64,000 nt of DNA, from positions 1 to 64,000 of the IMG/VR virus record IMGVR_UViG_3300017763_000002; one strand, given 5' to 3'. The notes beneath the pieces are model-generated. The model had not been told where the DNA came from and made no database searches. It worked only from the letters and a program-made list of their open reading frames with translations. Below, in pieces: positions 13,405-63,406 of this stretch; within the stretch, counting starts at the first letter, position 1, and the number at the start of each line of letters is the position of its first letter. The translations under genes and the position numbers were made by a program.

Positions 13405-13428
13405 TACACATGCAAAATTAATAGTGTA
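13405..13428. promoter_or_regulatory. divergent pair of GTGTA motifs
   Basis: Minus strand GTGTA(13409-13405)-10nt-ATG 13394; plus strand GTGTA(13424-13428)-11nt-ATG 13440. Confidence 0.65.
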
Positions 13429-40780: not shown

Positions 40781-41161
40781 ATGCTATATAATTATTGTAA
40801 ATGCTGCGGCGCTAAAAATTATTACGCTTTATCACCGCCTCAGTTTTGCTCCAACTGCGGGAGCTCATTTGGGGCTAATTCGGTTGCAAGTGAAGCTCAA
40901 GTCAAAAAATCTGAAGTAGCTTCTAAAAAAACAACAAGAGTGCGTAGGAGAAGGTTGCATGATGAACCTGAAGAAGATGGTTTGGATATAGACTCTATTC
41001 CAAAGGTAAGCAAATTAAAATATAATACCTCTCAGGGAGGAATCGGGGGCAGAGTTATGTCCTTGGAATCTCTTTTGCCTGAGCCGGAGAAAGAAAATAT
41101 TGAAAAAACCAAAACAGCAAAACCCAAAAGAAAAAGAGGAAGACCAAGAAAAGAAAAGTAA
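40781..41161 (+). CDS. zinc-ribbon protein with basic tail
   Basis: CKCCG...PQFCSNCG; C-terminal KRKRGRPRK (AT-hook-like GRP). Confidence 0.75.
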   Translation: MLYNYCKCCGAKNYYALSPPQFCSNCGSSFGANSVASEAQVKKSEVASKKTTRVRRRRLHDEPEEDGLDIDSIPKVSKLKYNTSQGGIGGRVMSLESLLPEPEKENIEKTKTAKPKRKRGRPRKEK

Positions 41162-41909
41162 TTACTCTTTTGAGGAACAGTATGAAACAATAAATAAAGA
41201 AGTCAAAAAACGCAGAAATAAATGGTTTTTAGACTCTCTGGCGTGGTTTGATTTTGAAGATGTTGAGCAAATAATAAAAGCTCACATATATAAAAAATGG
41301 GATCAATGGGATCAATCCCGACCTTTGGGGCCGTGGATAAATAAAATTATTACTAACCAGATGAAGAATATCTTGCGTAATAATTATAGTAATTTTGTCA
41401 GACCCTGCTTGAACTGTCCTTTTAATCAATCTAAAACAAGTATGGATCCTGGAATTAGCTCCGGGTCTTTGTGTGGATTCACTAGAACGGGTTTGCAAGA
41501 TTCAGAATGCCCTTTATATGCGAAATGGGAAAAAACTAAAAAATCAGCTTATGATATTAAAATGGCCGTTACAATGGAAAACCATACAGGAGAAGTTTCA
41601 GTAATGGAGAATTCTCAATTAGACATTGATGAAGCGATCAAAAAATTATCAAAAGAAATGAAAAAACATCTTCCTGAAAAACAATACAAAGTATACAAAA
41701 TGCTTTATGTAGAACACAAAAGCGAAGAAGAGGTTGCTAAAATCATGGGGTATAAAACTAGTGAGACGGGGCGCAAGGCTGGATACAAGCAATTAAAAAA
41801 TTTAACGAAAATTTTTAAAGAAAAAGCAGTATCAATCTTAAAGAAAGGAGAAATAATCGCTTATGAAGAAGCTACTTCAGCTTACACAAGAGCAAAAAGA
41901 TCTTATTGA
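41100..41909 (+). CDS. phage sigma70/ECF-like sigma factor with Cys4 insertion
   Basis: Region 2-like EDVEQII..HIYKKWDQWDQSRPLGPWINKIITNQMKNILRN; CLNC...C...C insert; region 4 HTH LPEKQYKVYKMLYVEHKSEEEVAKIMG. Confidence 0.8.
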   Translation: MKKPKQQNPKEKEEDQEKKSNYSFEEQYETINKEVKKRRNKWFLDSLAWFDFEDVEQIIKAHIYKKWDQWDQSRPLGPWINKIITNQMKNILRNNYSNFVRPCLNCPFNQSKTSMDPGISSGSLCGFTRTGLQDSECPLYAKWEKTKKSAYDIKMAVTMENHTGEVSVMENSQLDIDEAIKKLSKEMKKHLPEKQYKVYKMLYVEHKSEEEVAKIMGYKTSETGRKAGYKQLKNLTKIFKEKAVSILKKGEIIAYEEATSAYTRAKRSY

Positions 41910-50808: not shown

Positions 50809-51345
50809 ATGGATGAGTACAAAGATTTAAAATTTATTAACGACGCGCAAGACACAAGCGAAGCGTTAAGAATGTATAAGTCACAATTATATAAAATGGC
50901 GCAATGCGCTCAAAAAATATTCGAATCCTTGAATTCTGGAGATGAAATTGAAGAATGGATGAAATCGTCGATTCTACGCGCATACAATGGCCTAGAAGAG
51001 GTTTCTAGTTATATAGACTATAATTCATCATTTCCTAAGGTAGAAGACCCTCTAGAGCCCTTAGAGGACGATCCAAGGAAAAACAATAATTATTTAACCA
51101 ACGAAGACAAGCGTTTTCCTGTGCCCCAAGAAGCTGAAGGTGGCGATGATTTTGTTGGAAGGTGTATCTCAGACCCAGCAATGAAGGGAAGATACCCCCA
51201 ACAATCTGATAGATTTATGGCGTGCTTGTTAATATATAATAAAAATATTGAAAACGCAGCAGATAATCCTGGAGTTCCTTTTGAAGATCCAATGGAAAAG
51301 AAAGATGAAACTCAAATGGATCCAGAAAAGCCTATTTTACCTTAA
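50809..51345 (+). CDS. hypothetical protein (start refined from 50788)
   Basis: GTGTA(50792)-12nt-ATG; MYKSQL...EEWMKS and P.P...E..DDFVGRC motifs recurrent in phage head-region proteins. Confidence 0.65.
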   Translation: MDEYKDLKFINDAQDTSEALRMYKSQLYKMAQCAQKIFESLNSGDEIEEWMKSSILRAYNGLEEVSSYIDYNSSFPKVEDPLEPLEDDPRKNNNYLTNEDKRFPVPQEAEGGDDFVGRCISDPAMKGRYPQQSDRFMACLLIYNKNIENAADNPGVPFEDPMEKKDETQMDPEKPILP

Positions 51346-53791
51346 GTTTTAATTTTCCTTTTTCAAAAACTAGCGAAGTCTTTGTTCCGTCGCCAATTTC
51401 TTTTTTAATAATTAATTCAGATAGAGGGTCTTCAATTTCTTTTTCAATCATTCTTGCTACCGGCCTAGCTCCAAAATTTTGATTGGCAATATGCTCACTG
51501 ATATATTTCTTAGCAGAAGCTGATAATGAAAAGGATATGTTCATTTCTTTTAATTTATTTTTTAAAGGTCTAAGTTCAATATTAAATATTTTAATTATAT
51601 CTTCCTCATTCAAGTTTTGATATACTAATACTTCTGATATTCTGTTCACGAATTCTGGACGAAGCATTTCGCAAGCTTTTTGTATAATTTTTTCTTTCTT
51701 CTTATCTTCATTGTCTACCGAGTTAAATCCAATGCCACCTCCTTTGTGAGATATTTCAGATCCTATATTGCCTGTGATAATTATTACAGAGTTAGAAAAG
51801 TCTCCAACTCTTCCTAGTCCGTCGGTCAATCTACCTTCATCCATAATTTGCAGTAAACATTGAATTGCATCAGGGTGAGACTTTTCTATTTCATCAAATA
51901 ATATAACGCTATATGGATTTTTACTTATTTTATCTATTAAAAAAGAACCCTCTTCATACCCTACATAACCCGGCGAAGCTCCAGACAATTTATTGCTGGA
52001 AGTTTTATCTGAAAACTCTGACATATCAACTCTAATAATTTCTGAGTTTTTGCCAACCAAGAATTGAGAGAGTATTTTCGCTGTATGTGTTTTGCCAAGT
52101 CCTGTTTGCCCTAGTATTAGGAAACTAGCAATTGGCTTTCGCCTTTCTCTTAAACCAGATTTTGATCTTAATATGGCTTTCGAAATAGATTCTACAGCAT
52201 CGTCTTGTCCTACAATATGGTTTTTGAGTTTTTTCTCCAGAGATAAATATATTTCTGCATCACTTTTAGATAGCTCCGACATCGGTATTTTTGTGGATTG
52301 CGACACCGTTCTGTAAATGTCTTGAGGGGTTATTTTCTTTTTGTTGCTGAATTTTCTTTTTGCCCAAGAGTTTAAACTTTTTTTATACTTGTCTAATAGC
52401 TCGTCTTGAGCTCGTAATATTTCTTTTGTATCCTTAAAGTTACTAGTCAGTTCGTCTTCTTGGTTCATTAAAATTTCAAGCTGCTTTTCCATCTCTACAG
52501 TAGACTTCGGTCTTTTGAAAGATTTGATTTTTACTTTTGCGCCTGTCTGGTCTAATATATCTATAGCTTTATCCGGAAAGTTTTTAGAAGGTATATATCT
52601 TGCGGATAGCTCTACAATAATTTCAAGGCATTCATCTGGGAATTCTACATAATGAAACTCTTGGTACTTATCTTTTATACCTTTTAATATTTCTAATGTT
52701 TCTTCTTTTGAAGGGGCTCTGCAGCGCACAGCTTGAAATCTGCGATCAAGGGCTCCATCTTTGAGTATAGTCTTTTTATATTCTCCATCTGTAGTCGCCC
52801 CTATGCATCTGATATTGCCTCTTGCTAAGGCAGGCTTTAGCATGTTAGCTGCGTCCATGCTACCCTCCGCGCTACCCGCTCCAACCAAAGTGTGAATTTC
52901 ATCTATGAAAAGTATCTTATTATCATCTTGAGAAACTTCTTCAATAACCGATTTTAGACGCTCTTCAAATTGCCCCCTATACTTTGTTCCAGCAATCATA
53001 GACCCAAGATCTAAGCCGAAAATAATTTTATTTAAGAGCGGTTCTGGGCAATGCCCTGAATATATAGAGTTGGCCAAGCCTTCAATAATAGCCGTTTTTC
53101 CAACTCCTGGGTCACCAATAAGAACCGGGTTATTCTTGGTTCTTCTTGATAAAATCTCGCAAACCTCTAAAATCTCTTCGTCTTTGCCTATGATTTTATC
53201 TAGTTTTTCTTGTTGAGCTAAATCATTATAGTTAATGCAGAACTTTTCTATTGATGATGATTTTTTAGAAGGAGCTTGCTGCGCTTCTCTCGGAGTTTCT
53301 TGTGACGGAGAGATAAAAAATGGAGTGAAATTGGGAGAACTTACATTTTCTGAAGACAACTGAAAGTAGTTCTTGATTTCATCAATAATTAAATCTTCTG
53401 GAATTTGCATTGATTTAAAATATTTTGATACAGGAGATCCATCATACTTAAGTAGAGACAGTAGTATGTGTTCTATACCTACATAATCGTGCCCAAAGTT
53501 GGCGCTAATTACGGAAGAGATTTCAAGCACCTGCTTGAACTTAGAAGAAAACTCTAATTTGGGATCTTTACTATTGTTTTTTTTGCTAGGAGGTTTCATG
53601 GAGGAGGTTAATTTTAATGGGTCAATTCCCATAGAAGTTAAAACTTCATGAACGATTCCAGCTTTCAACTGCAATATGCCTAGGAATAACTCCTCTAAAC
53701 AAACTTTTGACTTTTTATTTTCCTTAGCTATTTTTCTTGAAATTTCTATTGCTCTTTGAGCTCTTGGTGTAAAATTTGGTTTTGGTTGCAT
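51332..53791 (-). CDS. clpC: ClpC/ClpA-type AAA+ unfoldase (start refined from 53806)
   Basis: Clp-N repeats (FTPRAQRAI, YVGIEHILLSLL); NBD1 GDPGVGKT/FIDEIH; NBD2 GQTGLGKT/FDEIEK; ClpP-docking IGF loop (GGIGFN); GTGTA-10nt-ATG. Confidence 0.9.
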   Translation of the reverse strand: MQPKPNFTPRAQRAIEISRKIAKENKKSKVCLEELFLGILQLKAGIVHEVLTSMGIDPLKLTSSMKPPSKKNNSKDPKLEFSSKFKQVLEISSVISANFGHDYVGIEHILLSLLKYDGSPVSKYFKSMQIPEDLIIDEIKNYFQLSSENVSSPNFTPFFISPSQETPREAQQAPSKKSSSIEKFCINYNDLAQQEKLDKIIGKDEEILEVCEILSRRTKNNPVLIGDPGVGKTAIIEGLANSIYSGHCPEPLLNKIIFGLDLGSMIAGTKYRGQFEERLKSVIEEVSQDDNKILFIDEIHTLVGAGSAEGSMDAANMLKPALARGNIRCIGATTDGEYKKTILKDGALDRRFQAVRCRAPSKEETLEILKGIKDKYQEFHYVEFPDECLEIIVELSARYIPSKNFPDKAIDILDQTGAKVKIKSFKRPKSTVEMEKQLEILMNQEDELTSNFKDTKEILRAQDELLDKYKKSLNSWAKRKFSNKKKITPQDIYRTVSQSTKIPMSELSKSDAEIYLSLEKKLKNHIVGQDDAVESISKAILRSKSGLRERRKPIASFLILGQTGLGKTHTAKILSQFLVGKNSEIIRVDMSEFSDKTSSNKLSGASPGYVGYEEGSFLIDKISKNPYSVILFDEIEKSHPDAIQCLLQIMDEGRLTDGLGRVGDFSNSVIIITGNIGSEISHKGGGIGFNSVDNEDKKKEKIIQKACEMLRPEFVNRISEVLVYQNLNEEDIIKIFNIELRPLKNKLKEMNISFSLSASAKKYISEHIANQNFGARPVARMIEKEIEDPLSELIIKKEIGDGTKTSLVFEKGKLKLKVK

Positions 53792-53805
53792 CATAGTAAT
53801 ATACA

Positions 53806-56385
53806 CTACTTTAGGTCAGCGAGTTTCATATATATATTCTCCTTTAAAACATTAATGTTGTTCACAAAGAATATATCGTCAGCTTTAGACCCATAGGTCA
53901 CAATTATTGAGTTTTTTTCTGGAGCTTCATTTATATTTAAAAATTCATCAAGTTTGTTTTCTTTTGAATTATTGCAAAGCATGCAGTTTAGAGATCCAAA
54001 TTCATCTGCTATTTCTAGTTTCATGTATTTATTTCCAGATCTACTAATTCTAGTAAAGCAATCTAATACAATTCCTATCACGCTAAGGTTTGAGTTTTTT
54101 CTTTTTTCTTTATATTCTTTTAGATTTGTTAGTTTTAGCCCAGGCTTGCCAAATATATTTCTTAAGTCTTCGCTATAAGAATAGCCTAGCAGTTGATTCT
54201 CGAAGTACCAATTAGCAAAGCTGCTGGATTTGCTATTTTGCATATATATATTTTTATAAGGTTCGTATTTTTTCTTAAAGGTTTGAAATCTAGATTCCTT
54301 GAATAAAGGCCTTCCATCATCTCCCACTAAATTATTATCTCTAGCACTAACAATCGCATCTAGCAACTTGTAATTAAACTTTTCGCCCAACTGAATAAAA
54401 TTTCTTTTCTCGCGATCCGTAAGAACATTAAACACTTGAGCCTCTAGAACTAACAAGGGTCTGCTGCCTTCAAAATTAGAAAGCGCTCCTGCTTGTATTA
54501 AAGCGCACAGTGTGCCGATGTGTAATCCAGCTTGCTTGGCAGATATAAACATTTCATATTTTGTGTCTCCTGATTGAGATCTGAATTCTATTAATGATTT
54601 TAAAGCTTTTTCAGAAATACCTTTGATGGAGTTTAATCCGTACCTGATGTCGTTGCCTTCAATGGAGAAATCCATCTCTGATTTAGATAAATTGGGGGGC
54701 AAAAGTTTTATTCCGAAATAAGATAATTCTTTACTTATTTTACCCACTTCTTCTTGAGGAGAAGGTTCAAACTTTGTCATATTAAGCAAGGATAAGAAAA
54801 AATGTATTGGATACTTAAATTTTAGATAAGTTGTCCACGCGGCTAATGTAGAATACGCAATAGAATGGCTTTTATTGAAAGAGTAGTTAGCGCTATCCTC
54901 CGCCACCCTCCAAAGCACTTCTCCGGCATCCGCTCCTTCTCTGTTCAAGTCTTTGTTGGTTAGCTTGTTGTCTTCAATTTTTTGGAATATTCTCTGCTTC
55001 CATTCTGCCATTTTTTCTACTTTCTTCTTGCCAACAATTCTTCTGAGCTGTTCAGACTCATCTAAGGTGAAACCTACTTTAACGGCCATCTTCATCAGCT
55101 GTTCTTGGTACAAAGGAATACCTCCAGTATAGTCTAATATGTCATCAAAGATGGGATGAACACTCTGGAAATTTCCTGTTTCAACATAAGTCTCATAGTT
55201 AGATAAAAAATCTAAAGCTCCAGGTCTGGCGATAGCTAGCACGGCGCTTAGCTCTTCTATATTTTTAGGCTTGATTTTTCTGCATACTTTAAAATCTGTT
55301 TCCGCTTCAATTTGGAACAATCCTCTAGGACAAATAAGGTTTTGTAGGTTTGAGTATATATCACCAGAATGAACATCTATCTCTTCTAAATCAATGCCTA
55401 CTAAATTTGCGGTATTATGTAGCACGCTTAAAGTTCTTAAACCTAAAATGTCGAACTTCACCATTAGCTCCGCAACCCAATTCATATCATACCCTGTGAT
55501 TTTTTGCCCGTCTGAATTTATAGAAACAGGACAAACTTCAGATATAGGTCTATGTGAAATAGCTATACCAGAAGGATGCACACCAGTGTTTTTGTTAAGG
55601 TTTTGAATTTTTTTGGCGATTAGTACGATTTCTTCGTTATCTTTACTCCACTCTCTGAAGTCTTCGCTTTCTTCTAGAGAGACCTCTATAGACGCAACCT
55701 TTCCAAATTTCTTTGGAATCATGTCGCTAACCCTGTTTGCATCTTGCTCGCTTTGGTCTCCTACTATTTTAATGCATTCTTTTAGGCATAGCTTACTGCT
55801 TAAGGTGTTCAGTGTTAGTATTTTAGCTGTTCTTCCGGGGTGTTTTTTCTCAATATAATCTACAACTAAGTGGCGATATTCATAAGCTATATCGTTATCA
55901 ACGTCAGCAAGTAAACTTCCGTCTAGGTATGTTTCTCCTTCGCTTTCTATTTTTCTCGCTCTACTTTTAGACACAAACCTTTCAAAGAACAATTCATTTT
56001 CAATAGGGTCTATCTTAGTTACATTGATTAAGAATAAAACTAAAGAGCCTGCAGCACTGCCTCTTCCTGGCCCTGTTGGTATTCCGTTTTCATGACAGAA
56101 ATTAATAATATCCCAATTTAATAAAATATAATCTGTAAATCCTAATTCTTCTAATATGTTTAATTCATCATTTAGTCTTTTGATATATTGTTTATGATTA
56201 TCTTTTTTATTTAATTCTTTAGACAGTAAGCCTTTGTTACATATTTTAGTTAGAAATTCAAAATTAGATACATCGTTTTCTATTCCTAGCTCTCTGTAAA
56301 ATCTAGAATCTATTTTAAGCTGAGGCAGTTTTACGCCAGGCTCCATAGCTTTATTATAAGTGGAGAAAGAATCTAAAAAACTCAT
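53806..56385 (-). CDS. dnaE: DNA polymerase III alpha catalytic core, lacking the PHP domain
   Basis: GPGRGSAAGSLV, LLADVDNDI, HPSGI, KFDILGL, YQEQLM, YSFNKSHS, IRYGLNSIKGI and a C-terminal OB fold. Confidence 0.95.
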   Translation of the reverse strand: MSFLDSFSTYNKAMEPGVKLPQLKIDSRFYRELGIENDVSNFEFLTKICNKGLLSKELNKKDNHKQYIKRLNDELNILEELGFTDYILLNWDIINFCHENGIPTGPGRGSAAGSLVLFLINVTKIDPIENELFFERFVSKSRARKIESEGETYLDGSLLADVDNDIAYEYRHLVVDYIEKKHPGRTAKILTLNTLSSKLCLKECIKIVGDQSEQDANRVSDMIPKKFGKVASIEVSLEESEDFREWSKDNEEIVLIAKKIQNLNKNTGVHPSGIAISHRPISEVCPVSINSDGQKITGYDMNWVAELMVKFDILGLRTLSVLHNTANLVGIDLEEIDVHSGDIYSNLQNLICPRGLFQIEAETDFKVCRKIKPKNIEELSAVLAIARPGALDFLSNYETYVETGNFQSVHPIFDDILDYTGGIPLYQEQLMKMAVKVGFTLDESEQLRRIVGKKKVEKMAEWKQRIFQKIEDNKLTNKDLNREGADAGEVLWRVAEDSANYSFNKSHSIAYSTLAAWTTYLKFKYPIHFFLSLLNMTKFEPSPQEEVGKISKELSYFGIKLLPPNLSKSEMDFSIEGNDIRYGLNSIKGISEKALKSLIEFRSQSGDTKYEMFISAKQAGLHIGTLCALIQAGALSNFEGSRPLLVLEAQVFNVLTDREKRNFIQLGEKFNYKLLDAIVSARDNNLVGDDGRPLFKESRFQTFKKKYEPYKNIYMQNSKSSSFANWYFENQLLGYSYSEDLRNIFGKPGLKLTNLKEYKEKRKNSNLSVIGIVLDCFTRISRSGNKYMKLEIADEFGSLNCMLCNNSKENKLDEFLNINEAPEKNSIIVTYGSKADDIFFVNNINVLKENIYMKLADLK

Positions 56386-57023
56386 ACTTCTACCTCCCAG
56401 AGCATTTTTTGAAAAACATCCATATTCTTTTGAATATCATACATTGCGTCATGCAGTTTACTGGGGTCAAAATCTATATCGTAATCCCTGCAGCATTGCT
56501 GCAGATTTACTTTTAAGCCTTTTTCCCTGAAATTTAAAAGCTTATACATCCACGCGATCCTTTCAGAGTTATTCTTCTTTTTAATATCTTTTTTAATTGA
56601 CCTTGCTAGGCAAACTGTGTCTATTGATCTATTAATGTAAGAGTAATCTGCGCTTTTATTTAAAAGCTTTCTGTGGATATTATGTATATAAACATCAAAC
56701 CCTAAAATGTTGTGGCCTAAAGGTATGATTTTTTCATCATACAGGTATTTTTCAAAATGTTCCAAAGCTTTTTCTGGGCAAGATTTTCTTTTATTATACA
56801 TGGATTTTGTGAAACCAGTAATCCTGGCAGCTTCTTTCGAGACTTGTAAATTCTTCCAGTCTAATATATAATCCCCTTGATCTAATATTTTATCTCCCTG
56901 AAAAAGCATGAAGGCTAATTGCCAAGGTTTATTTTTGGTTGATATTAAATTCAGATTACATGTTTCATAATCAAATATTATATACTTTTGGTTTTTATTA
57001 AACCTTAATAATTCTTCTTTCAT
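56382..57023 (-). CDS. DEDDh 3'-5' exonuclease (DnaQ/epsilon-like)
   Basis: IIFDYET, GHNILGFDV and LHDAMYDI motifs. Confidence 0.9.
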   Translation of the reverse strand: MKEELLRFNKNQKYIIFDYETCNLNLISTKNKPWQLAFMLFQGDKILDQGDYILDWKNLQVSKEAARITGFTKSMYNKRKSCPEKALEHFEKYLYDEKIIPLGHNILGFDVYIHNIHRKLLNKSADYSYINRSIDTVCLARSIKKDIKKKNNSERIAWMYKLLNFREKGLKVNLQQCCRDYDIDFDPSKLHDAMYDIQKNMDVFQKMLWEVEV

Positions 57024-57026
57024 ATT

Positions 57027-57755
57027 TTAAAATGGTTGTTGTTGATGTTCTAGAAATGATTCGAAGCAAAATTCATCGCTGCCAAAATGGTCTAGACCTG
57101 GATTGCCTAAGTTTCTTTGTCCAAATTTTCTACTACAGATGCATTGATATGTTTGAAAAGCTTCGATGTCTTTCCTGCTTTTATATTTTACAGACTTAAC
57201 CTCTTGTGTTATATAGTTATTAATGTCACAGTATTCTAATAATTTAGACCTAATAACAGAATCAAAGGGTAGCCCGTTGTGTTCCATGAAAAAAGTAGGA
57301 TTAAAATGTTTTAGATTAGGAGTGCAGTTTTCAAACTCCATGAGATTTTTATGCAAAAAAGAATCGTAAAAAGGTATCACCATGGTTAAATCGTTCGACC
57401 AATACTTCTTTATTACTTCTAAACTTATTGAATTAGTTTCTGGGTCTTTTTGGCTAAAGATGATGTTTAGCTTTTTGCACCCCTGACTATTATTTGCAAA
57501 TATAACCAGTTTATGTTTTTGAGAATCACATAAAAAAGATAACCCAAAGACTAAGTCTATTTCATTTTCAATAGAAGTTGACAATGCTTGAGGAAAACCT
57601 GTTAAGCTGTTTTCAACTAAAACAATTTTATCTAAATTGTTTTCTTTTGCAATATCAAAAATACTATCCGAAGTATTTTCTTTTTCACCCCCAGGTGCGG
57701 CGAGCGTTAATATGCTTTTTCCAATGCTATAGTGAGAAGTGAATATAGGAATCAT
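57027..57755 (-). CDS. stand-alone PHP domain of DnaE, metal ligands degenerate (start refined from 57794)
   Basis: IFTSHYSIGKSIL, IVLVENSLTGF, LVFGLSF and KLVIFANNSQGCKKLN parallel the DnaE N-terminal PHP motifs (H.YS..D, DH, AKN..GY.NL). Confidence 0.8.
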   Translation of the reverse strand: MIPIFTSHYSIGKSILTLAAPGGEKENTSDSIFDIAKENNLDKIVLVENSLTGFPQALSTSIENEIDLVFGLSFLCDSQKHKLVIFANNSQGCKKLNIIFSQKDPETNSISLEVIKKYWSNDLTMVIPFYDSFLHKNLMEFENCTPNLKHFNPTFFMEHNGLPFDSVIRSKLLEYCDINNYITQEVKSVKYKSRKDIEAFQTYQCICSRKFGQRNLGNPGLDHFGSDEFCFESFLEHQQQPF

Positions 57756-57764
57756 TATGGTAGA

Positions 57765-57794
57765 AGTATACCATAATAATACGCATATTGTCAA
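57765..57794 (-). promoter_or_regulatory. sigma70-type promoter for the polymerase operon
   Basis: TTGACA-18nt-TATACT with TG extension; ATG 57755 is 9 nt downstream. Confidence 0.75.
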
Positions 57795-57802
57795 GAATTA
57801 AC

Positions 57803-58621
57803 TCAGTACTTTTTACTGGCTGCAGAAGGTTTTTTGTGGGTGTATCCCATTTTTTTATACTTCAAGTGATCGGAGTAAGTTTTAGCTTGGAAAGCCTTAC
57901 CCGACTTGTCGTACATAGTATGCGGTTTAAAATCTTTTTCGCCTTCTTCAGCTTTAGATTTTTTCTTTTTGTTTAAAATTGCTTTTTTGACAGCATCTGG
58001 TAATTTTTTTTGTTGATCAGTCAGCTTGGAATTATCTTCTTTCTTATCTTCTGCCTTTGATTTTTTCTTAGGCTTTTGAGCTTTTTTCCAAGATTTAGAA
58101 TCAGGTCGATCTTTATCTCCGGGTTTTGCTGGTCGGTAATTTTTACCTTCACGTTTTTTCTTGTCTCGTATGTTGTCCCAAAGTCCACGTTTGCTTTCTG
58201 AAACCTCCGACTCATCTAACATTTCAAGAATTTCCTCTTCAAAGTCAACGCTACTGGTAACTTTGCTAACTGGTTTCTTACTCCACATTTTACAAGACCA
58301 ATATTTAGCTTTGGTTTTTGGTCCTGGGCTGTCACAATTATGTCTAGCTCTAAAAGACTTTCTTCTTGAGGGGCTATCTCGTTTAATTTCCATGTTCGGG
58401 TCTCCGAAATTAACTTTAACAACGTTACCCTTTTCGTTTTTAACATAAACTGAAAACTTCTTCGGTCCCCCTGAAGTTCTAAATGGTTTATTTAACTTTT
58501 TGCCTTTATTTTTCTCCTCGGCAAAAACTTCTTCAGAAACAGCTTCCTCAAATCCCTGTTCGTCTAAGAGCGCAGCTCTAATTTCTTCTGTTAAATCAAT
58601 GTTTTTAATATATTTTTTCAT
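57803..58621 (-). CDS. Lys-rich mosaic hypothetical protein (possible virion core protein)
   Basis: LNKPFRTSGGPKKFSVYVK...VNFGDPNMEIKRD...RKSFRARHNC...YWSC, a module I recall from large-phage DUF6321-like proteins; GLWDNIRDKK module. Confidence 0.7.
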   Translation of the reverse strand: MKKYIKNIDLTEEIRAALLDEQGFEEAVSEEVFAEEKNKGKKLNKPFRTSGGPKKFSVYVKNEKGNVVKVNFGDPNMEIKRDSPSRRKSFRARHNCDSPGPKTKAKYWSCKMWSKKPVSKVTSSVDFEEEILEMLDESEVSESKRGLWDNIRDKKKREGKNYRPAKPGDKDRPDSKSWKKAQKPKKKSKAEDKKEDNSKLTDQQKKLPDAVKKAILNKKKKSKAEEGEKDFKPHTMYDKSGKAFQAKTYSDHLKYKKMGYTHKKPSAASKKY

Positions 58622-59889
58622 TATGATAAAAGTTCTCGTATAATTTTCCCATCGTGCGCAACCTTAAACGGTCTGCCGCTTGGAGAAAAAGTTATTTTTC
58701 TTGTGTCTAATCCCATCGCATATGCTATAGTTGCATTTAGATCTTCCATGCCAACCCCGCCTTCTTCTACGTAGTGGGCTCGTTCATCAGAGGCTCCATG
58801 TACAAACCCAGACTTAATCCCACCGCCTGCAAGTAGGGCGCTAAATGAAGAGGGGTGATGGTCTCTGCCAATTCTTCCAGGTTTTACTTCAGGAGTCCTG
58901 CCAAATTCACTTGCGACAACAACCATAGTTTCAGATAATAACCCTCTTACGTCTAGATCTTCTAGTAATGTAGAAAGCGCTTGGTCTAAAGTCGCTCCAC
59001 GAGTTTCCATAGCGCCAAAAACGTCATTATGCATATCCCAACCGCCGAGTATTACTTCAATAAATCTTACATTATTTTCAACTAATCTTCTAGCTAAAAG
59101 ACAACCCTGTCCAAAGTTGTTATCTCCATAAGATTCTCTAGTTTTTTCGTTTTCCTTTGTCAAGTCAAAAGCTTCTAAATCTTTGCTCTGCATTAACTTG
59201 ACTGCATCATCGTATAGATCTGTATAAGCTCTAACTCTTTTTTGTGGAAAGTCAGATAAAAAATCATCGTTAAATGCTTTAGCAACATCTAGTCTTTGGT
59301 TGTATAAGTTTTGATCTAAATAGTCAGATTTTTGTACATTTTGTATGCCTGCGCTAGGATTTCCTAGCGGAAGCGGCCCGTATCTTTTTTCGAAATATCC
59401 TGCGCCTAAAATATTGCTTCCACCATTAACTCTAACATTAGCTGGTAAATTGGCGTTTGCGTTCCCTCTCATTTTTGTAATCCAGCTTCCAAGAGTTGGG
59501 TGAATTATAGTTCCTCTTTTTTGGTAGCTTGTGTGAAGTAAATAATTAGCCTGTTCGTGAGCGCCCTGGTTTGTATTGAGAGATCGAAGCAAGGAAGCTC
59601 TATGCATTTGAGAAGCGGTTTTTGGCAGCCAATGCCCAAGCTGTATTCCATGAGCAGAAGAGTCGATTGCATTTGTTTCTCCCATAACATCTGAATTTTC
59701 GGGCTTAGGGTCAAAAGTGTCAATGTGCGTCATCCCTCCTCCCATATATAAGAATATTACGCTTTTCGCTTTGGGTATAACGTCAGGTGTATTTAGCGCT
59801 AATAGTTCTTTTGAGCCAATTATAGCATTAACACCTAACAAGCCTTTGGCGAGGCCAGCGACAAAACTTCTTCTACTTATATCGTTCAT
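58621..59889 (-). CDS. DUF1501 family protein with Tat-like signal
   Basis: ISRRSFVAGL, AKSVIFLYMGGGMTHIDTFDPKP, FGQGCLLARRLVENNVRFIEV, GWDMH, LLEDLDVRGLL, SEFGRTP, GRDHHP and GGIKSG motifs; GTGTA-11nt-ATG. Confidence 0.92.
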   Translation of the reverse strand: MNDISRRSFVAGLAKGLLGVNAIIGSKELLALNTPDVIPKAKSVIFLYMGGGMTHIDTFDPKPENSDVMGETNAIDSSAHGIQLGHWLPKTASQMHRASLLRSLNTNQGAHEQANYLLHTSYQKRGTIIHPTLGSWITKMRGNANANLPANVRVNGGSNILGAGYFEKRYGPLPLGNPSAGIQNVQKSDYLDQNLYNQRLDVAKAFNDDFLSDFPQKRVRAYTDLYDDAVKLMQSKDLEAFDLTKENEKTRESYGDNNFGQGCLLARRLVENNVRFIEVILGGWDMHNDVFGAMETRGATLDQALSTLLEDLDVRGLLSETMVVVASEFGRTPEVKPGRIGRDHHPSSFSALLAGGGIKSGFVHGASDERAHYVEEGGVGMEDLNATIAYAMGLDTRKITFSPSGRPFKVAHDGKIIRELLS

Positions 59890-59905
59890 AACATATTATA
59901 TACAC

Positions 59906-61948
59906 TTATTTAATAAAAATAAACTCATGAGAATTCAATAAAATCCAAGATACATGCTTGAATCCATCTGGTTTTTCAATGATATTTTTTAAAGCATTAA
60001 ATTCTCTAGTCGTTGGTTTTCTGGCTAATATCGAAAGAAAAACGCTTTCAATCTGTTTATTTTTTGATTTTTCTGATTGCATTTGCTCCATAAAATCTGC
60101 GTCTTTTTTACGTAAGATGTTTGTCTCCACGAAGCCATTCAGCAGACTTAAAACCTGCGGGGTATTTGGCTCTTTACTGCTATTATCTATCTGCTCTCTA
60201 TCTGAACCGCCAAACTGCCGTATAAGGTGCCCTCCTGGGGCTGGAGAGCTAAGGTAGCTACTTCTCACTAGCTGGCGGTCGGGGAATTTATTATTAGAAT
60301 ACTGATGTTCGTCTATTAGTTTTATAAAATTTCTTTCTCCGGGGTTTTCGTCAGCGAGTTTTTTGATATCTTGATAAATTTCTTGACCCGACATGTCTTT
60401 ATACCTATTGAATATTGGTGAATAGTCAGGTTGATTATGAAGGTAAAATCTTTTTTGACTGTCGATATCATTGTAAACTAGAGTAACTAAAGAGTCCCAT
60501 AACTGCTCTCCTGTCATGCGTCTGAGTATTGGCCCTTCAAAATTATATTCTTCTAGACTTTTGTAGTCAGCTTTTTTTGACTGTCTTTGGAAAAGTTTTG
60601 TATTAAGTAAAATTTTTTGGTATTCTCTGATGTCGTAGTTCACACTAACAAAAATGCGCTCTAAGTATTTCATGAGAGTTTCATTACTCGAAAGAGTTTT
60701 ATCTGACATTGTATCTATTGGTTCGATTAGTCCTGCGCCAAAAATTTGCTTCCATATTCTATTTGCAATCATGGTGGTGAACCTTGGGTTATCTTTGCTT
60801 GTTATCCATTCTGCTAAAATTTTTCTGCTTTTAGGGTCAGACGCTTTAGGGTCAAATATAGGTTTGGGGGTAAAAATCGCTTTAGCATAAACTGTATCAC
60901 CAGGTTTGCCATTTGATTCCGCAAAATCTCTGGGCAGTTTTATTTGGCCAGTGCCATTACTTTCTATCCCAAATATTAAAGAGTCTCTGATTTGGTTTCT
61001 CCAGTTATTGAATAAACCCGCCCTTGAATCTGCATCCTTATTGATCTCAGAACTTAACTTGCCGATTTCTCTACCAGCAGAATTAACTCTTACATTGCCA
61101 ATGCCAGAGGTGAATGCTGTCATTTCATAAAATTCTTTTTGTGTCCAGCGGTCAAAAGGATGGTCATGGCACATAGCACACTGCAGTCTTGTCCCTAAAA
61201 ATATTCTTATGGTGTGGGAAAGATTGTCGGCTTGCATGCCTCTATCTCTTAAGAAGTAACTAACTGCTGCGCTTTCTTTTGTTTCGAATATTCTACCTGT
61301 ACTTGACACTAATTCTGTAACAATTTGATCGTAGGTTTTGCCTTCTCTTAAAGATTCTCTTAACCATTTTCTATAAACCGCTCCAACGTTAATATTAGTT
61401 CCGTTTACTCTATCTTTTATCCTGAGCATGTCGCTCCACCAATTCATTTGATGGCTCACATAACCTTCAGAGTTAAGTAATTTTAAAACGAGGCTTTGTC
61501 GAGGATTAGGCGTTCTGTCGCTTTCAAATTCTTCTATCTCTTTTTGTGTGGGGATTCTACCTATTAAAGTAAGATAAGTACGTCTAATATATACCGAGTC
61601 TTCTATGTCTTTAGTTTTTTGAATTCTTTTTTCTCGTAAGTTTTGCTCGATTAAAGAGTCAATGTATGATGAATAAATTTTTAAAGTCTTATTATCTAAT
61701 GGGGTTTTAACTTGAGGTATTTGGCTGTACCTATTTTCTGAATGATAAAGCTCAATTTGTTTTTGAGTGTCTTGTGTTAACATTGACGTTTTGAATCTAA
61801 ATTGTTGAAGATCTTCAGCTCTCTGTATGATTACATGAGTTTCATTAGCTTCTAATATTTTTGCGTCAAGACTTTTGCCATTATTGAAATATAATTTATC
61901 AGCAAAACAAAAAGATGTAGATAGTAATAATAGTATTGATATTTTCAT
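59906..61948 (-). CDS. secreted SHD1-like + DUF1549 + DUF1553 (PSD1-type) protein
   Basis: Signal peptide; YIRRTYLTLIGRIPT, LQCAMCHDHPFDRWTQKEFY, LAEWITSKDNPRFTTMIANRIWKQIFGAGLIEPID, RRMTGEQLWDSL and SWILLNSHEFIF motifs. Confidence 0.9.
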   Translation of the reverse strand: MKISILLLLSTSFCFADKLYFNNGKSLDAKILEANETHVIIQRAEDLQQFRFKTSMLTQDTQKQIELYHSENRYSQIPQVKTPLDNKTLKIYSSYIDSLIEQNLREKRIQKTKDIEDSVYIRRTYLTLIGRIPTQKEIEEFESDRTPNPRQSLVLKLLNSEGYVSHQMNWWSDMLRIKDRVNGTNINVGAVYRKWLRESLREGKTYDQIVTELVSSTGRIFETKESAAVSYFLRDRGMQADNLSHTIRIFLGTRLQCAMCHDHPFDRWTQKEFYEMTAFTSGIGNVRVNSAGREIGKLSSEINKDADSRAGLFNNWRNQIRDSLIFGIESNGTGQIKLPRDFAESNGKPGDTVYAKAIFTPKPIFDPKASDPKSRKILAEWITSKDNPRFTTMIANRIWKQIFGAGLIEPIDTMSDKTLSSNETLMKYLERIFVSVNYDIREYQKILLNTKLFQRQSKKADYKSLEEYNFEGPILRRMTGEQLWDSLVTLVYNDIDSQKRFYLHNQPDYSPIFNRYKDMSGQEIYQDIKKLADENPGERNFIKLIDEHQYSNNKFPDRQLVRSSYLSSPAPGGHLIRQFGGSDREQIDNSSKEPNTPQVLSLLNGFVETNILRKKDADFMEQMQSEKSKNKQIESVFLSILARKPTTREFNALKNIIEKPDGFKHVSWILLNSHEFIFIK

Positions 61949-62397
61949 AGTTTTTTTATAATGTTTACGATCTCTTCATCCATTGGTGTTGGTAGGGTAT
62001 CTATGTATTGGCTTTTAAAATACCCGCATTCAGTGTGCTCGTAATCTAAATTGATAGTTTCCATTCTTTCTAGTGGATATTCAAATAGCGACAAGTCTCT
62101 AATTCTTGACAAAATTTTTAATTTATTTTCATCTATAATTAAACCTGTCTCTTCTAAAACTTCCCTGCATGCCGCTTTCTCGAGAGATTCTCCAGCTTCT
62201 ACTGCTCCACAAAATGGAGACCAGTAACCTCCGAATGGAACTTTAAAATTATTATGTGGGCATACTTCAATTCTCTTAGCTAAAACCACTAACTGACCAA
62301 GCCTTAGAATAACCCCTACATTAGTTGATGATCTAAAGTTCGAAGTCGTTATGTCTGCACTGGAATGATGGGCATCCGCTATATTGTCTTTTTTCAA
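61945..62397 (-). CDS. NUDIX hydrolase (start uncertain)
   Basis: Nudix box GAVEAGESLEKAACREVLEETGL. Confidence 0.9.
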   Translation of the reverse strand: MKKDNIADAHHSSADITTSNFRSSTNVGVILRLGQLVVLAKRIEVCPHNNFKVPFGGYWSPFCGAVEAGESLEKAACREVLEETGLIIDENKLKILSRIRDLSLFEYPLERMETINLDYEHTECGYFKSQYIDTLPTPMDEEIVNIIKKL

Positions 62398-63406
62398 TTG
62401 TAAATCCTTTCTCTAATTTTTGATCTAATGAATCTTTGTCTTCTGGGTATACACTTTTTTTGATGCTTCCCTCTTCATCCAAAAGCACATAGTACTCAAA
62501 AGGTTTACGGAACTGACATATGTAGGCTTTGATTGGGCTTCCATCTTTATCTAAAACTTCCTTACCCTTAGACATCTTGTAGCCATCTTTACCGCAAGAC
62601 AAAGGCCCTCCAAATGTGCCGTCTTTAGGGTAAGACTGATCTGAAGCAAAATTGGATTTTGCATTATTTTCTGAAAAATTTTCTAAATAATTCTGTACGC
62701 CAGACAGCTCATACTCAAACCCCTCAAGAACATCATCTGATAATTCTTTCATTTTTATTACTCCTGGGCCAGATTCACCCAGCATATCTTTTTCTAGAAC
62801 AAATTTTAAAAACAAAAACTCACTAATACTTTTATACTTTGGGTATAATTTTTTAATCGCTAGACAATACATTAAGTCTTGCATGTTGTCGCTGATTTCC
62901 TTGCCTTTAAATTTTTGCTTGCTTGATTTGAAGTCTCTTATTATTGCGGATCCGTCTGCGTAAAGAAATAATTTATCGATAAACCCTCTTATGTTATATC
63001 TTTTTTCTCCTTCTTCAATCTGTAAATTAAACTCTTTTTCGGAGAAAGACTTGTCGAGTTTTCCTGGGTCTTTTCCGAAAAAATCGTAGTTTAAACCGTT
63101 GACTACCATTTTGTTTATGTCATCTAGGCTTTCTTGGTTAAAAACGCTTAAGCGCTTTGCATGTTTGTGTACCATTTTTTCGATAGAAGGAACGCACCAA
63201 ATAGTTTGCTCTTTGATTATTAAATCAAAATATTTTTTCCTTCTTACGTTTCCAAGCACTTCAAAAATAAGGTGACATATCCATCCTTTTGATGCGCCAT
63301 CATTGCTTTTGTCTGGAAGTTTTAATACGTACTTGGCCCAATATAACCAAGAACATTGTTGCGCAGTTTTAATTCTGCTGGCGGATAGGAAAATGGGTTT
63401 TTTCAT
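62333..63406 (-). CDS. PD-(D/E)xK nuclease (RecB/Cas4-like exonuclease)
   Basis: LSASRIKT...C, GWICH, RGFIDKL and IIRDFKSSK motifs; C-terminal cysteines. Confidence 0.85.
   Translation of the reverse strand: MKKPIFLSASRIKTAQQCSWLYWAKYVLKLPDKSNDGASKGWICHLIFEVLGNVRRKKYFDLIIKEQTIWCVPSIEKMVHKHAKRLSVFNQESLDDINKMVVNGLNYDFFGKDPGKLDKSFSEKEFNLQIEEGEKRYNIRGFIDKLFLYADGSAIIRDFKSSKQKFKGKEISDNMQDLMYCLAIKKLYPKYKSISEFLFLKFVLEKDMLGESGPGVIKMKELSDDVLEGFEYELSGVQNYLENFSENNAKSNFASDQSYPKDGTFGGPLSCGKDGYKMSKGKEVLDKDGSPIKAYICQFRKPFEYYVLLDEEGSIKKSVYPEDKDSLDQKLEKGFTIEKRQYSGCPSFQCRHNDFEL

What the first reader, a model, noticed from the sequence alone, without database searches (positions are those of the whole stretch)
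58621..61948. Phage-borne DUF1549/DUF1553 + DUF1501 pair, a PVC hallmark module of unknown function
Seen in sequence: both genes are intact and adjacent in the usual bacterial order. One has a Sec-type signal, an SHD1-like N-domain and a CxxCH motif (CAMCH, 61166-61180); the other has a twin-arginine signal. They sit between phage replication genes, and the DUF1501 gene has its own GTGTA motif, suggesting integration into the phage programme. Established: this pair is greatly expanded in Planctomycetes and Verrucomicrobia and is uncharacterised; DUF1501 is related to the alkaline phosphatase/sulfatase fold. Inference: an auxiliary periplasmic, possibly heme- or metal-dependent, two-protein system that benefits infection. 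I know of no description of it in phages, and it gives both a host clue and a route to the function of the family.
Basis: partly seen in the sequence, partly recalled or inferred. Interest (0 to 1): 0.8.

Follow-up and report, generated by a model that had tools for sequence, protein, structure and literature searches.

The report
Jumbo phages repeatedly captured a verrucomicrobial gene pair
A family of uncultured marine jumbo phages carries an intact, strongly conserved copy of an uncharacterised two-protein periplasmic module (PSCyt2-PSD1 plus DUF1501) that it took several separate times from marine Opitutia (Verrucomicrobiota), which points to the likely host and suggests the pair can be kept without the third gene of the cellular locus.

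Summary
Two adjacent minus-strand genes encode a Sec-signalled PSCyt2(DUF1549)-PSD1(DUF1553) protein with one CAMCH motif, and a twin-arginine-signalled DUF1501 protein. They sit inside the replication module of a real tailed phage (204.9 kb contig). Independent metagenome contigs bridge every junction, so this is not a chimera.

The pair is not a one-off:
- More than 120 protein clusters, many on 100-237 kb viral contigs, carry it.
- dN/dS is 0.014-0.055, and all family-invariant residues are kept.
- Codon GC matches the phage.

Both gene trees agree. The window's "type A" is one clade. A second set, "type B", interleaves with context-verified cellular orthologues from marine Opitutia. A single phage clade is rejected (AU p = 2.8e-5). 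A close relative (Pol III alpha 88% identical) carries type B at the same site, and others have an empty site. So this is a swappable cassette captured at least three times, always without the cellular third gene (a PSCyt1 cytochrome).

DUF1501 has a distant alkaline-phosphatase/sulfatase-type fold but no formylglycine motif. The partner's body has no solved structural relative. "SHD1-like" holds only as a generic small beta-barrel. The chemistry remains unknown. The best reading is a host-derived auxiliary periplasmic module.

The parts
59906..61948 (-). Gene for the 680-aa PSCyt2(DUF1549)-PSD1(DUF1553) protein, type A allele
   Evidence: ORF; Pfam PF07583 E 6e-43 and PF07587 E 3e-34; AF2 model pLDDT 87.8, pTM 0.87; no significant PDB fold match for the body
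61901..61948 (-). Sec-type signal peptide (residues 1-16, MKISILLLLSTSFCFA)
   Evidence: Sequence; pLDDT below 50 for residues 1-15; a comparable hydrophobic leader is present in all 20 phage copies
61745..61900 (-). Small N-terminal beta-barrel domain plus helix (residues 17-68); 'SHD1-like' only at fold level
   Evidence: Strands 17-53 and helix 59-68 in the model; Foldseek matches Hfq (TM ~0.6) and SHD1 2hbp (TM 0.59) about equally; no Pfam SHD1 hit; this segment is the recombination mosaic point in L191 and L193
61166..61180 (-). CAMCH motif (residues 257-261) within the conserved block C-A-x-C-H-D-H-P-F-D
   Evidence: Coordinates verified; C257, A258, C260, H261 and P264 invariant in 35 sequences; CAMCH in all 20 type A phage copies; CAQCH in all complete cellular partners and in type B
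59890..59905 (-). 16-nt intergenic spacer carrying GTGTA (59901-59905) followed by TATAAT-like sequence, 16 nt before the DUF1501 ATG; candidate phage promoter or start-proximal element
   Evidence: Sequence; motif statistics; same element before DUF1501 in L002, L011, L012, L014, L015, L017 and before type B DUF1501 in L191
58621..59889 (-). Gene for the 422-aa DUF1501 protein, type A allele; alkaline-phosphatase-superfamily fold
   Evidence: Pfam PF07394 E 8e-111; AF2 pLDDT 85.6; Foldseek to sulfatases, sulfamidase, LtaS and AP at E ~1e-7, TM 0.40-0.46; profile hit to GalNAc-6-sulfatase at E 0.001
59797..59889 (-). Twin-arginine (Tat) signal peptide, residues 1-31 (S-R-R-S-F-V at residues 5-10)
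   Evidence: Sequence; R6 and R7 present in 90 of 92 phage and cellular sequences; model disordered at residues 19-35
61945..62397 (-). Upstream flank: NUDIX hydrolase gene whose stop overlaps the PSC start (ATGA); left border of the cassette site
   Evidence: Pfam PF00293; sequence; in L188 and L149 NUDIX is followed directly by the 255-aa gene, i.e. an empty site
57803..58621 (-). Downstream flank: phrog_7595 gene (unknown function) whose ATG overlaps the DUF1501 stop (TAATG); right border of the cassette site. In several relatives it lies between the two genes
   Evidence: PHROG hit E 1e-12; synteny

Best explanation
The two genes are a host-derived auxiliary module of a marine jumbo tailed phage.

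Shown:
- They are intact members of the PSCyt2-PSD1 and DUF1501 families.
- They are embedded in the phage replication module.
- They are under strong purifying selection and ameliorated to phage codon composition.
- They are phylogenetically nested with a syntenic orthologous locus of marine Opitutia (Verrucomicrobiota).
- The two-gene unit entered this phage family at least three times (type A, the window's allele, plus at least two type B lineages). It is exchanged as a cassette at one site between NUDIX and phrog_7595.
- It always lacks the cellular third gene (PSCyt1 cytochrome c with LRR), the TonB receptor and the aminotransferase.

Inferred mechanism:
- During infection the phage transcribes the pair with its replication genes, with DUF1501 behind its own GTGTA/TATAAT-like element.
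- The helical PSCyt2-PSD1 protein is exported unfolded through Sec. There its invariant C-A-x-C-H-D-H block binds haem c or a metal.
- DUF1501 folds with its metal in the cytoplasm and is exported through Tat.
- In the periplasm the two act together. DUF1501 is the catalytic alkaline-phosphatase-superfamily subunit. Candidate active-site residues are S/T54, H55, D57, H111, D285, H287, E328, D343 and H344.
- The phage copies supplement or replace the host's own rate-limiting pair, and use the host's PSCyt1 cytochrome and outer-membrane receptor.
- The most likely chemistry is cleavage of a phospho- or sulfo-ester on a small imported organic substrate. This would keep nutrient or energy supply running while a ~205 kb genome is replicated.

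I put about 0.6 on 'functional host-derived auxiliary periplasmic module'. I put only about 0.25 on the specific ester-hydrolysis or nutrient-scavenging chemistry.
For: Family membership. Phage context. Not a chimera: independent contigs at 58362-59442, 59764-60862, 61882-62099 and 59210-61569 with 0 mismatches. Spread. Synteny, with the pair better conserved (67-76%) than Pol III alpha (~60%), Lon (40-52%) and NUDIX (~30%). Purifying selection, dN/dS 0.014-0.055. Signals, CxxCH and invariant residues kept. GC3 of the pair 0.29-0.30 against phage polymerase 0.31 and the cellular locus 0.44. Closest cellular relatives are all PVC, and the nearest are marine Opitutia. Cellular loci verified by context, with conserved synteny PSC-DUF1501-PSCyt1-Aminotran_5-glyoxalase. 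Concordant trees for both genes. AU tests reject one phage clade (p 2.75e-5) and one type B clade (p 0.0047). Cassette swap and empty site. Mosaic allele. Third gene present in 20 of 80 cellular loci, including the sister loci, but in none of 100 phage loci. AP-superfamily fold. RNA-library contigs identical to the window lie inside both genes.
Against: No biochemical function is known for either family (PMC3542564, PMC5615132), so the chemistry is inference from fold and context only. The fold match to AP-superfamily enzymes is distant (TM 0.40-0.46, ~11% identity). The nucleophile position could not be aligned. No cytochrome fold was detected for the CxxCH protein. Physical interaction of the two proteins was not tested. 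Two phage loci keep DUF1501 without a nearby partner, and in several relatives the two genes are 0.6-7.4 kb apart, so an obligate complex is not assured. Transcription is not proven, because the RNA libraries may contain DNA. The direction of transfer rests on parsimony (conserved cellular synteny), not on a rooted proof. The groups used in the AU tests were defined after seeing a tree. The host has not been observed directly.
Confidence: 0.6

Rival explanations
1. Envelope remodelling rather than metabolism. The exported pair would modify or strip a phospho- or sulfo-group from a host envelope or capsule component. The purpose would be to block superinfection, mask the receptor, or ease release of the large virion.
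For: Fold neighbours of DUF1501 include envelope-modifying AP-superfamily enzymes (LtaS, LtaP) as well as carbohydrate sulfatases. Both proteins are exported. The phage carries a 5,895-aa protein with CBM_5_12 carbohydrate-binding modules, which suggests glycan-based adsorption. Allele swapping between close relatives is also what host-range or exclusion determinants do.
Against: The cellular orthologues sit in a conserved housekeeping-like locus with a TonB receptor, a PSCyt1 cytochrome and an aminotransferase, not in envelope-biosynthesis clusters. DUF1501 has no membrane anchor, unlike LtaS or EptA. Very low dN/dS is unlike typical arms-race genes. There is no PADLOC hit.
Confidence: 0.12
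2. Redox or respiratory support. The PSCyt2-PSD1 protein would be a true c-type cytochrome. With DUF1501 and the host PSCyt1 cytochrome it would form a periplasmic electron-transfer enzyme, and the phage would boost it to sustain energy supply during a long infection.
For: CxxCH is invariant in every phage and cellular copy, and the protein is Sec-exported as cytochrome c maturation requires. The cellular third gene is a PSCyt1/cytochrome c protein with 1-2 CxxCH motifs. One verified cellular locus lies next to cytochrome oxidase genes. Kamneva et al. proposed an electron-transport role (PMC3542564).
Against: There is no structural similarity to any cytochrome. The extended C-x-x-C-H-x-H block would equally suit a Zn, Cu or Fe site. 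DUF1501 has a hydrolase/transferase-type fold. The phage never carries the bona fide cytochrome gene.
Confidence: 0.15
3. Assembly artefact, host contamination, or a decaying passenger gene with no role in infection.
For: The window is a metagenome-assembled contig. One homologue is deposited in a MAG labelled Paracoccaceae, showing that binning around these contigs is unreliable.
Against: Independent runs from different studies bridge all junctions with 0 mismatches. The same synteny is seen in dozens of contigs. Reading frames are intact, dN/dS is 0.014-0.055, GC3 matches the phage, and stop/start codons overlap with phage genes.
Confidence: 0.02

Closest known systems
Bacterial PSCyt2-PSD1 / DUF1501 gene module of Planctomycetes-Verrucomicrobia-Lentisphaerae (Kamneva et al. 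2012, PMC3542564; He et al. 2017, PMC5615132)
   Same: Same two Pfam architectures, same gene order and spacing, same Sec and Tat signals, same single CxxCH, and the same invariant residues. The nearest orthologues are in marine Opitutia.
   Different: It is encoded by a jumbo phage inside its replication module. Codon composition is phage-like, and a phage start-proximal GTGTA element precedes DUF1501. The PSCyt1 cytochrome/LRR gene, TonB receptor and aminotransferase of the cellular locus are absent. It uses CAMCH instead of CAQCH.
Marine phage auxiliary metabolic genes for nutrient acquisition (from general knowledge: cyanophage pstS and phoA; phoH, which this window also carries at 37376-38098)
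   Same: Host-derived, kept under purifying selection, thought to relieve a host bottleneck during infection. The fold is alkaline-phosphatase-like and the protein is exported.
   Different: The substrate and reaction are unknown. It is a two-protein exported unit, not a single enzyme. Neither family is in PHROGs v4 or in any of 50,697 deposited phage genomes.
Phage-encoded single subunits of host multi-subunit enzymes, for example pmoC in large freshwater phages (PMC7674155, listed)
   Same: A large phage carries only part of a host multi-component envelope system and presumably relies on the host for the rest.
   Different: Here two of three components are carried. They were captured several independent times and swapped as alleles at one site.
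Type I sulfatases and other alkaline-phosphatase-superfamily enzymes (PDB 4mhx/4miv sulfamidase, 1p49, 7stt, LtaS 2w5q, E. coli AP)
   Same: Core alpha/beta fold. The C-terminal metal-site strand aligns, DUF1501 'VVVASEFGR' with sulfatase 'VVIFSSDNG'.
   Different: TM is only 0.40-0.46 and identity ~11%. There is no C/S-x-P-x-R formylglycine motif. There is a different set of invariant residues and an obligate-looking partner gene.
A0A6J5M742, an auto-annotated DUF1501 protein of an uncultured Caudovirales phage (BFVD)
   Same: A DUF1501-fold protein filed under a phage.
   Different: Only 13% identical, TM 0.49, 489 aa. It is a different subfamily, its partner and context were not examined, and I found no publication discussing it.

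Membership tests
DUF1501 (PF07394) | Full-length match to the family profile above the curated cut-off | tested here: met
   371 bits against a cut-off of 27; profile positions 1-390 of 390
DUF1501 (PF07394) | Twin-arginine signal typical of the family's paired members | tested here: met
   S-R-R-S-F-V at residues 5-10; RR present in 90 of 92 phage and cellular sequences
DUF1501 (PF07394) | Alkaline-phosphatase-superfamily fold | tested here: met
   AF2 pLDDT 85.6; 231 PDB matches at E<=1e-3, all sulfatase/AP/LtaS type, though distant with TM 0.40-0.46
PSCyt2 (PF07583) + PSD1 (PF07587) | Both domains above curated cut-offs, in the order PSCyt2 then PSD1 | tested here: met
   147.6 bits (cut-off 29.8) and 118.9 bits (cut-off 28.5)
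PSCyt2 (PF07583) + PSD1 (PF07587) | Conserved CxxCH block and a DUF1501 gene immediately downstream | tested here: met
   CAMCH at residues 257-261, invariant Cys, Cys and His; DUF1501 16 nt downstream
c-type cytochrome | CxxCH motif on a Sec-exported protein | tested here: met
c-type cytochrome | Recognisable cytochrome fold or domain | tested here: not met
   No cytochrome among the Foldseek PDB hits (best E 0.3); no cytochrome Pfam hit even at E<=10
c-type cytochrome | Covalently bound haem | not testable with these tools
   Needs haem staining or spectroscopy of expressed protein
SHD1 (Sla1 homology domain 1) | Sequence match to the SHD1 profile | tested here: not met
   No Pfam hit for residues 16-80 or for the whole protein at E<=10
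SHD1 (Sla1 homology domain 1) | SHD1-type small beta-barrel fold | tested here: inconclusive
   2hbp TM 0.59, rmsd 1.7 A over 47 residues, but Hfq/Sm barrels match equally well and all E-values exceed 0.3
Type I (formylglycine) sulfatase | C/S-x-P-x-R formylglycine motif | tested here: not met
   Absent from the window protein and from 27 of 28 aligned family members
Type I (formylglycine) sulfatase | Match to the Sulfatase profile | tested here: not met
   No PF00884 hit; only a local C-terminal profile match to 7stt at E 0.001
Phage auxiliary (host-derived) gene | Lies inside a bona fide phage genome with phage genes on both sides, confirmed independently of one assembly | tested here: met
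Phage auxiliary (host-derived) gene | Nested within cellular homologues in phylogeny | tested here: met
   AU tests
Phage auxiliary (host-derived) gene | Maintained by selection in the phage | tested here: met
   dN/dS 0.014-0.055; invariant residues retained
Phage auxiliary (host-derived) gene | Expressed during infection | tested here: inconclusive
   RNA-library contigs identical to the window lie inside both genes, but DNA carry-over is not excluded

The most novel reading that the evidence does not exclude
The pair is a host-matched 'plug-in'. Each phage lineage would carry the allele of the Opitutia host it currently infects, because the two exported proteins must dock onto that host's PSCyt1 cytochrome and TonB-dependent receptor. 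Cassette replacement would then track host switching. The retained two-gene core would define a previously unrecognised class of periplasmic enzyme: an alkaline-phosphatase-fold catalytic subunit coupled to a haem- or metal-bearing helical partner. Its reaction would be limiting for growth of planktonic Verrucomicrobia and for phage yield.
Probability: 0.15. Interest if true: 0.85.

Novelty: new member of a known kind. Interest (0 to 1): 0.66.

Why it matters
1. Host link. The finding ties a widespread, uncultured family of marine jumbo phages (contigs up to ~237 kb, found in at least 10 independent marine studies) to marine Opitutia. Two genes and several independent transfer events support this link. 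Very few phages of Verrucomicrobia are known. The first lytic one, described in 2015, is small (capsid ~47 nm; PMC4642752).

2. New auxiliary gene class. It adds a class of phage auxiliary gene that is absent from PHROGs and from all deposited phage genomes.

3. A lead on the module's function. This PVC module has had no known function since it was defined (PMC3542564). The phages amount to a natural deletion experiment. Repeated capture keeps exactly PSCyt2-PSD1 plus DUF1501 and never the PSCyt1 cytochrome. DUF1501 is the more persistently retained half. The phage versions are compact and have low GC, and the many natural alleles make them convenient for expression, metal and haem analysis, and structure determination.

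4. Gene turnover in jumbo phages. The three states at one site (type A, type B, empty) and the mosaic alleles give a clear example of cassette turnover inside a jumbo-phage replication module.

Tried and rejected
- Megablast of 20 kb of the window against GenBank phages: no match.
- tRNA scan: none found.
- PDB sequence searches for both proteins: nothing.
- Foldseek of the partner protein: no significant fold relative, so no functional lead.
- ESM Atlas for the partner protein: only weak leads (scores below 0.8) to the parallel PSCyt3/PSD2/PSD4 families.
- NCBIfam and PADLOC: no informative hits.
- hhalign of the DUF1501 profile against a real sulfatase: aligned only the C-terminal metal-site strand. 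My idea that invariant H111 occupies the formylglycine position could not be tested, and I dropped it as a claim.
- Literature searches on DUF1501, DUF1549, DUF1553, DUF1800 and on marine jumbo phages: no functional study and no mention of the pair in phages. The one phage paper mentioning DUF1501 refers to a weak hit in a 61-aa protein.
- My first reading, 'one ancient acquisition sister to Opitutia NP117', was overturned. Relatives found through Pol III alpha revealed type B, and verified cellular orthologues were then added.
- A length heuristic to separate phage from cellular type B proteins was abandoned as unreliable.
- Model coordinates are not exposed by the tools, so active-site geometry and the environment of the CxxCH motif could not be inspected.

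Full report
**1. What is in the sequence**

The window holds two adjacent minus-strand ORFs. One runs 59906-61948 (680 aa) and the other 58621-59889 (422 aa).

Pfam assigns the first to PSCyt2/DUF1549 (residues 96-281, E 6e-43) plus PSD1/DUF1553 (375-656, E 3e-34). It assigns the second to DUF1501 over the whole profile (E 8e-111).

It is the only CxxCH in any window ORF of 100 aa or more.

The first protein starts with a Sec-type leader (MKISILLLLSTSFCFA). The second starts with a twin-arginine motif (S-R-R-S-F-V).

The genes are packed into an operon-like run with phage genes. The NUDIX stop overlaps the first gene's ATG (ATGA). The DUF1501 stop overlaps the next gene's ATG (TAATG). Only 16 nt separate the pair.

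**2. The context is a real phage and the assembly is sound**

The window is the first 64 kb of IMG/VR contig IMGVR_UViG_3300017763_000002, which is 204,906 bp long. It encodes these phage functions:
- a large terminase, a Lon-type protease, and a Pol III alpha with a separate DnaQ-like exonuclease
- a capsid-fold protein (Atlas scores 0.97-0.99 to Uroviricota capsid clusters)
- an internal virion protein, PhoH and a sigma factor

It has no close deposited relative. Terminase identity is at most 27% and Pol III alpha at most 35%.

The stretch 57500-63400 is present in marine metagenomes from about ten studies. Contigs from two independent DNA runs cross every junction with zero mismatches:
- X5: 58362-59442, 59764-60862 and 61882-62099
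- X3: 59210-61569

Two RNA libraries hold contigs identical to the window inside both genes. Examples are 59377-59675 and 59466-59741 in DUF1501, and 61271-61600 and 61677-61899 in the partner gene. This suggests transcription but does not prove it, because DNA carry-over cannot be excluded.

**3. The GTGTA element**

GTGTA is depleted in the window: 36 copies against 64.8 +/- 8.0 in dinucleotide shuffles. Yet 15 of the 36 lie 5-35 nt upstream of an ATG that opens an ORF of at least 60 aa. The rate for the 29 same-composition pentamers is 9% (binomial P = 2e-7).

The motif is typically followed by an A/T-rich, TATAAT-like stretch. It occurs as divergent pairs at 13405/13424, 17071/17085 and 37342/37356.

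The copy at 59901-59905 sits 16 nt before the DUF1501 start. The same arrangement precedes DUF1501 or the partner gene in many relatives. It also precedes the divergent type B DUF1501 of L191. I read it as a phage promoter or start-proximal signal, which is an inference. The phage sigma factor at 41100-41909 is a candidate reader.

**4. Spread and selection**

DUF1501 homologues at 69% identity or more form over 120 clusters at the 90% level, many on contigs of 100-237 kb. Twenty IMG/VR contigs carry the pair at 67-87% identity.

In these relatives the pair lies in the same replication neighbourhood. It is better conserved (67-76%) than Pol III alpha (~60%), Lon (40-52%) or NUDIX (~30%).

Wherever synonymous sites are not saturated, dN/dS is 0.014-0.055 for both genes.

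All phage copies keep the Sec-like leader, the RR motif and CAMCH. Fifteen polar positions of DUF1501 are invariant across 92 phage and cellular sequences: S/T54, H55, D57, H111, Y116, H130, D285, H287, D311, E328, R331, R342, H344, D368 and others.

GC3 of the pair (0.29-0.30) equals that of the phage polymerase (0.31) and differs from the nearest cellular locus (0.44).

**5. Origin**

The best 80 hits in one-genome-per-species reference genomes are all PVC bacteria. The closest are two marine Opitutia/Puniceicoccaceae MAGs, L041 and L042. Named relatives in the large protein collection are Verrucomicrobiota as well. In nearly every cellular locus a PSCyt2-PSD1 gene lies directly upstream of DUF1501.

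First trees put all the phage copies I had in one clade, sister to L041/L042, for both genes.

Searching for relatives through the phage's own Pol III alpha changed the picture. Of 65 loci with at least 9 kb upstream of the polymerase, 28 hold a DUF1501 and 25 hold both genes. These fall into two classes:
- **Type A**, the window's class, at 70-87% identity.
- **Type B**, with DUF1501 at 48-52% and the partner at 37-40% identity.

Type B is much closer to L041/L042 than type A is. For DUF1501 the figures are 63-72% against 54-57%. For the partner they are 52-56% against ~41%.

I then verified by gene context that L041, P0351 (L201/L202), P0342 (L203) and P0374 (L204) are cellular. Their neighbours include cytochrome oxidase, a tRNA synthetase and a TonB receptor. 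They share one syntenic locus: [TonB receptor]-PSC-DUF1501-PSCyt1(+LRR)-class V aminotransferase-glyoxalase.

A careful, outgroup-rooted DUF1501 tree of 92 rows shows two things:
- Type A is one clade (100/100, long stem).
- Type A is sister (100/96) to a clade in which these verified cellular orthologues interleave with at least three type B phage subclades.

I call the subclades B1 (L196), B2 (L144/L136/L161) and B3 (L191 and twelve others). B3 is sister, at 98/95, to the cellular group containing P0342 and P0374.

The partner-gene tree gives the same pattern. B3 is sister to cellular L203 (98/94), B2 is separate, and type A is a long-stemmed clade.

AU tests reject a single clade of all phage copies (delta lnL 92.7, p = 2.75e-5). 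They also reject a single type B clade (p = 0.0047). One caveat applies: these groups were defined after a tree had been seen.

The cellular copies occupy a conserved syntenic locus, so host-to-phage capture is the parsimonious direction. The count is at least three events. In each, the two genes moved together.

**6. A swappable cassette**

L191 is a close relative of the window phage. Identities are Pol III alpha 88%, exonuclease 86%, phrog_7595 86%, PD-(D/E)XK 82%, Lon 80% and NUDIX 69%. Yet it carries type B (partner 39%, DUF1501 51%) at exactly the same site, between NUDIX and phrog_7595.

L188 and L149 have an empty site there.

L191's partner protein is a mosaic. Its first ~45 residues are type-A-like (78% identical to the window) and the rest is type B with CAQCH. 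L144's type B copy keeps the Opitutia-like N-domain. So alleles recombine among co-circulating phages.

Other variations:
- In several type A relatives, phrog_7595 lies between the two genes, or the genes are up to 7.4 kb apart.
- L012 and L017 hold an extra distant DUF1501 paralogue.
- L161 and L196 have DUF1501 with no partner within 10 kb.

None of 100 phage loci holds the PSCyt1 gene, the TonB receptor or the aminotransferase of the cellular locus. In cellular genomes the PSCyt1 gene follows DUF1501 in 20 of 80 loci, including both loci closest to the phages.

**7. What the proteins look like**

*DUF1501.* The model is confident (pLDDT 85.6, pTM 0.83). It matches sulfatases, sulfamidase, LtaS and alkaline phosphatase, but only distantly: E ~1e-7, TM 0.40-0.46, ~11% identity.
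- A family profile reaches GalNAc-6-sulfatase at E 0.001. It aligns 'VVVASEFGR' to the sulfatase metal-site strand 'VVIFSSDNG'.
- There is no formylglycine motif, so it is not a canonical sulfatase.
- A weak Pfam hit to type I phosphodiesterase also appears.

*Partner protein.* The model is also confident (pLDDT 87.8, pTM 0.87).
- Its large helical body has no significant match in the PDB, and no cytochrome appears among the hits.
- Its N-terminal beta-barrel resembles Hfq/Sm barrels and the SHD1 domain about equally. It gets no Pfam SHD1 hit. 'SHD1-like' is therefore a fold-level resemblance only.
- The conserved block C-A-x-C-H-D-H-P-F-D could hold haem c or a metal. This cannot be decided here.

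**8. Interpretation**

Shown:
- an intact, selected, exported-looking two-gene unit
- repeatedly captured by one jumbo-phage family from marine Opitutia
- integrated into the phage's replication module and exchanged as alleles

Inferred: the pair works in the periplasm of the infected cell. DUF1501 would be a Tat-exported metal-dependent catalytic subunit. The helical protein would be a Sec-exported haem- or metal-bearing partner. Together they would supplement the host's own module and rely on the host for the PSCyt1 cytochrome and the outer-membrane receptor.

The most likely purpose is to sustain processing of an imported organic ester or related substrate for nutrient or energy supply during replication of a ~205 kb genome. 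I hold the general statement at about 0.6 and the specific chemistry at about 0.25.

The rivals are envelope remodelling or superinfection exclusion, redox support through a true cytochrome, and artefact. They are weighed in the Rival explanations section. The artefact reading is refuted.

**9. Comparison with what is known, and novelty**

The module is the known PVC 'DUF1501 + PSCyt/PSD' system, whose function is still unknown (PMC3542564, PMC5615132). Membership in both families is met.

What is new is the phage setting. Neither family is in PHROGs v4 or in 50,697 deposited phage genomes. The searchable literature holds no discussion of it.

The only precedent I found is one auto-annotated, very distant DUF1501 protein of an uncultured Caudovirales phage in BFVD (13% identity).

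Conceptually it is a new member of the class of host-derived auxiliary phage genes. It has two unusual features: repeated capture of the same partial module, and allele swapping at a fixed site.

This is an environmental phage of marine heterotrophic bacteria.

Noticed in passing
window 18704-36391 (+): A single 5,895-aa ORF directly after an internal-virion-protein gene (18190-18726). Pfam finds only CBM_5_12 carbohydrate-binding modules, RCC1-like repeats and a weak DUF4214 hit. It is probably a giant adhesin, fibre or virion-associated protein.
   Followed up: partly
window, both strands: + strand 13424, 17071, 18164, 37356, 38093, 40133, 46405, 49867, 50792; - strand 13405, 17085, 37342, 53802, 59901: GTGTA followed by a TATAAT-like A/T-rich stretch lies 12-26 nt before many start codons. 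Several copies form divergent pairs. The pentamer is otherwise depleted (36 against 64.8 expected). It looks like a phage-specific promoter giving very short leaders.
   Followed up: partly
window 41100-41909 (+): A phage-encoded sigma-factor-like protein (phrog_1740, E 3e-7). It is a candidate reader of the GTGTA element.
   Followed up: no
window 37376-38098 (+): A PhoH-like phosphate-starvation-inducible ATPase (phrog_170, E 3e-60), a classic marine-phage auxiliary gene, preceded by a GTGTA element.
   Followed up: no
window 53806-57794 (-): The replicative polymerase seems split. A 255-aa ORF with no family hit (57027-57794; its N-terminus looks PHP-like to my eye only) is followed by a DnaQ-like exonuclease (56382-57023) and a Pol III alpha core lacking a PHP domain hit (53806-56385). 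The trio is syntenic in all 80 relatives.
   Followed up: partly
window 51332-53806 (-): An 824-aa Lon-like ATP-dependent protease (phrog_4871, E 3e-227) lies immediately downstream of the polymerase. It is conserved in all relatives.
   Followed up: no
L012 and L017, 8703-9974; L123, 370-1644: Some relatives carry an additional, very divergent DUF1501 paralogue (33-35% identical) that groups with a different verrucomicrobial subfamily. This suggests still more captures from the same protein family.
   Followed up: partly
P0012: A 79%-identical DUF1501 on a 122.8 kb contig is deposited in NCBI as part of a 'Paracoccaceae bacterium' MAG. In the tree it sits inside phage type A, so the contig is probably a mis-binned phage genome.
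   Followed up: partly
L201/L202 10603-12289; L041 10026-11252; L203 11598-12815: In marine Opitutia the three-gene module is consistently followed by a class V aminotransferase (cysteine-desulfurase-like), sometimes NifU, then a glyoxalase. A TonB receptor, a sulfatase or a PL14 lyase lies nearby. This could be a functional link or plain synteny.
   Followed up: no
window 57803-58621 (-): The phrog_7595 protein has a lysine-rich C-terminal half. It moves around within the cassette region, lying between the two genes in several relatives.
   Followed up: no
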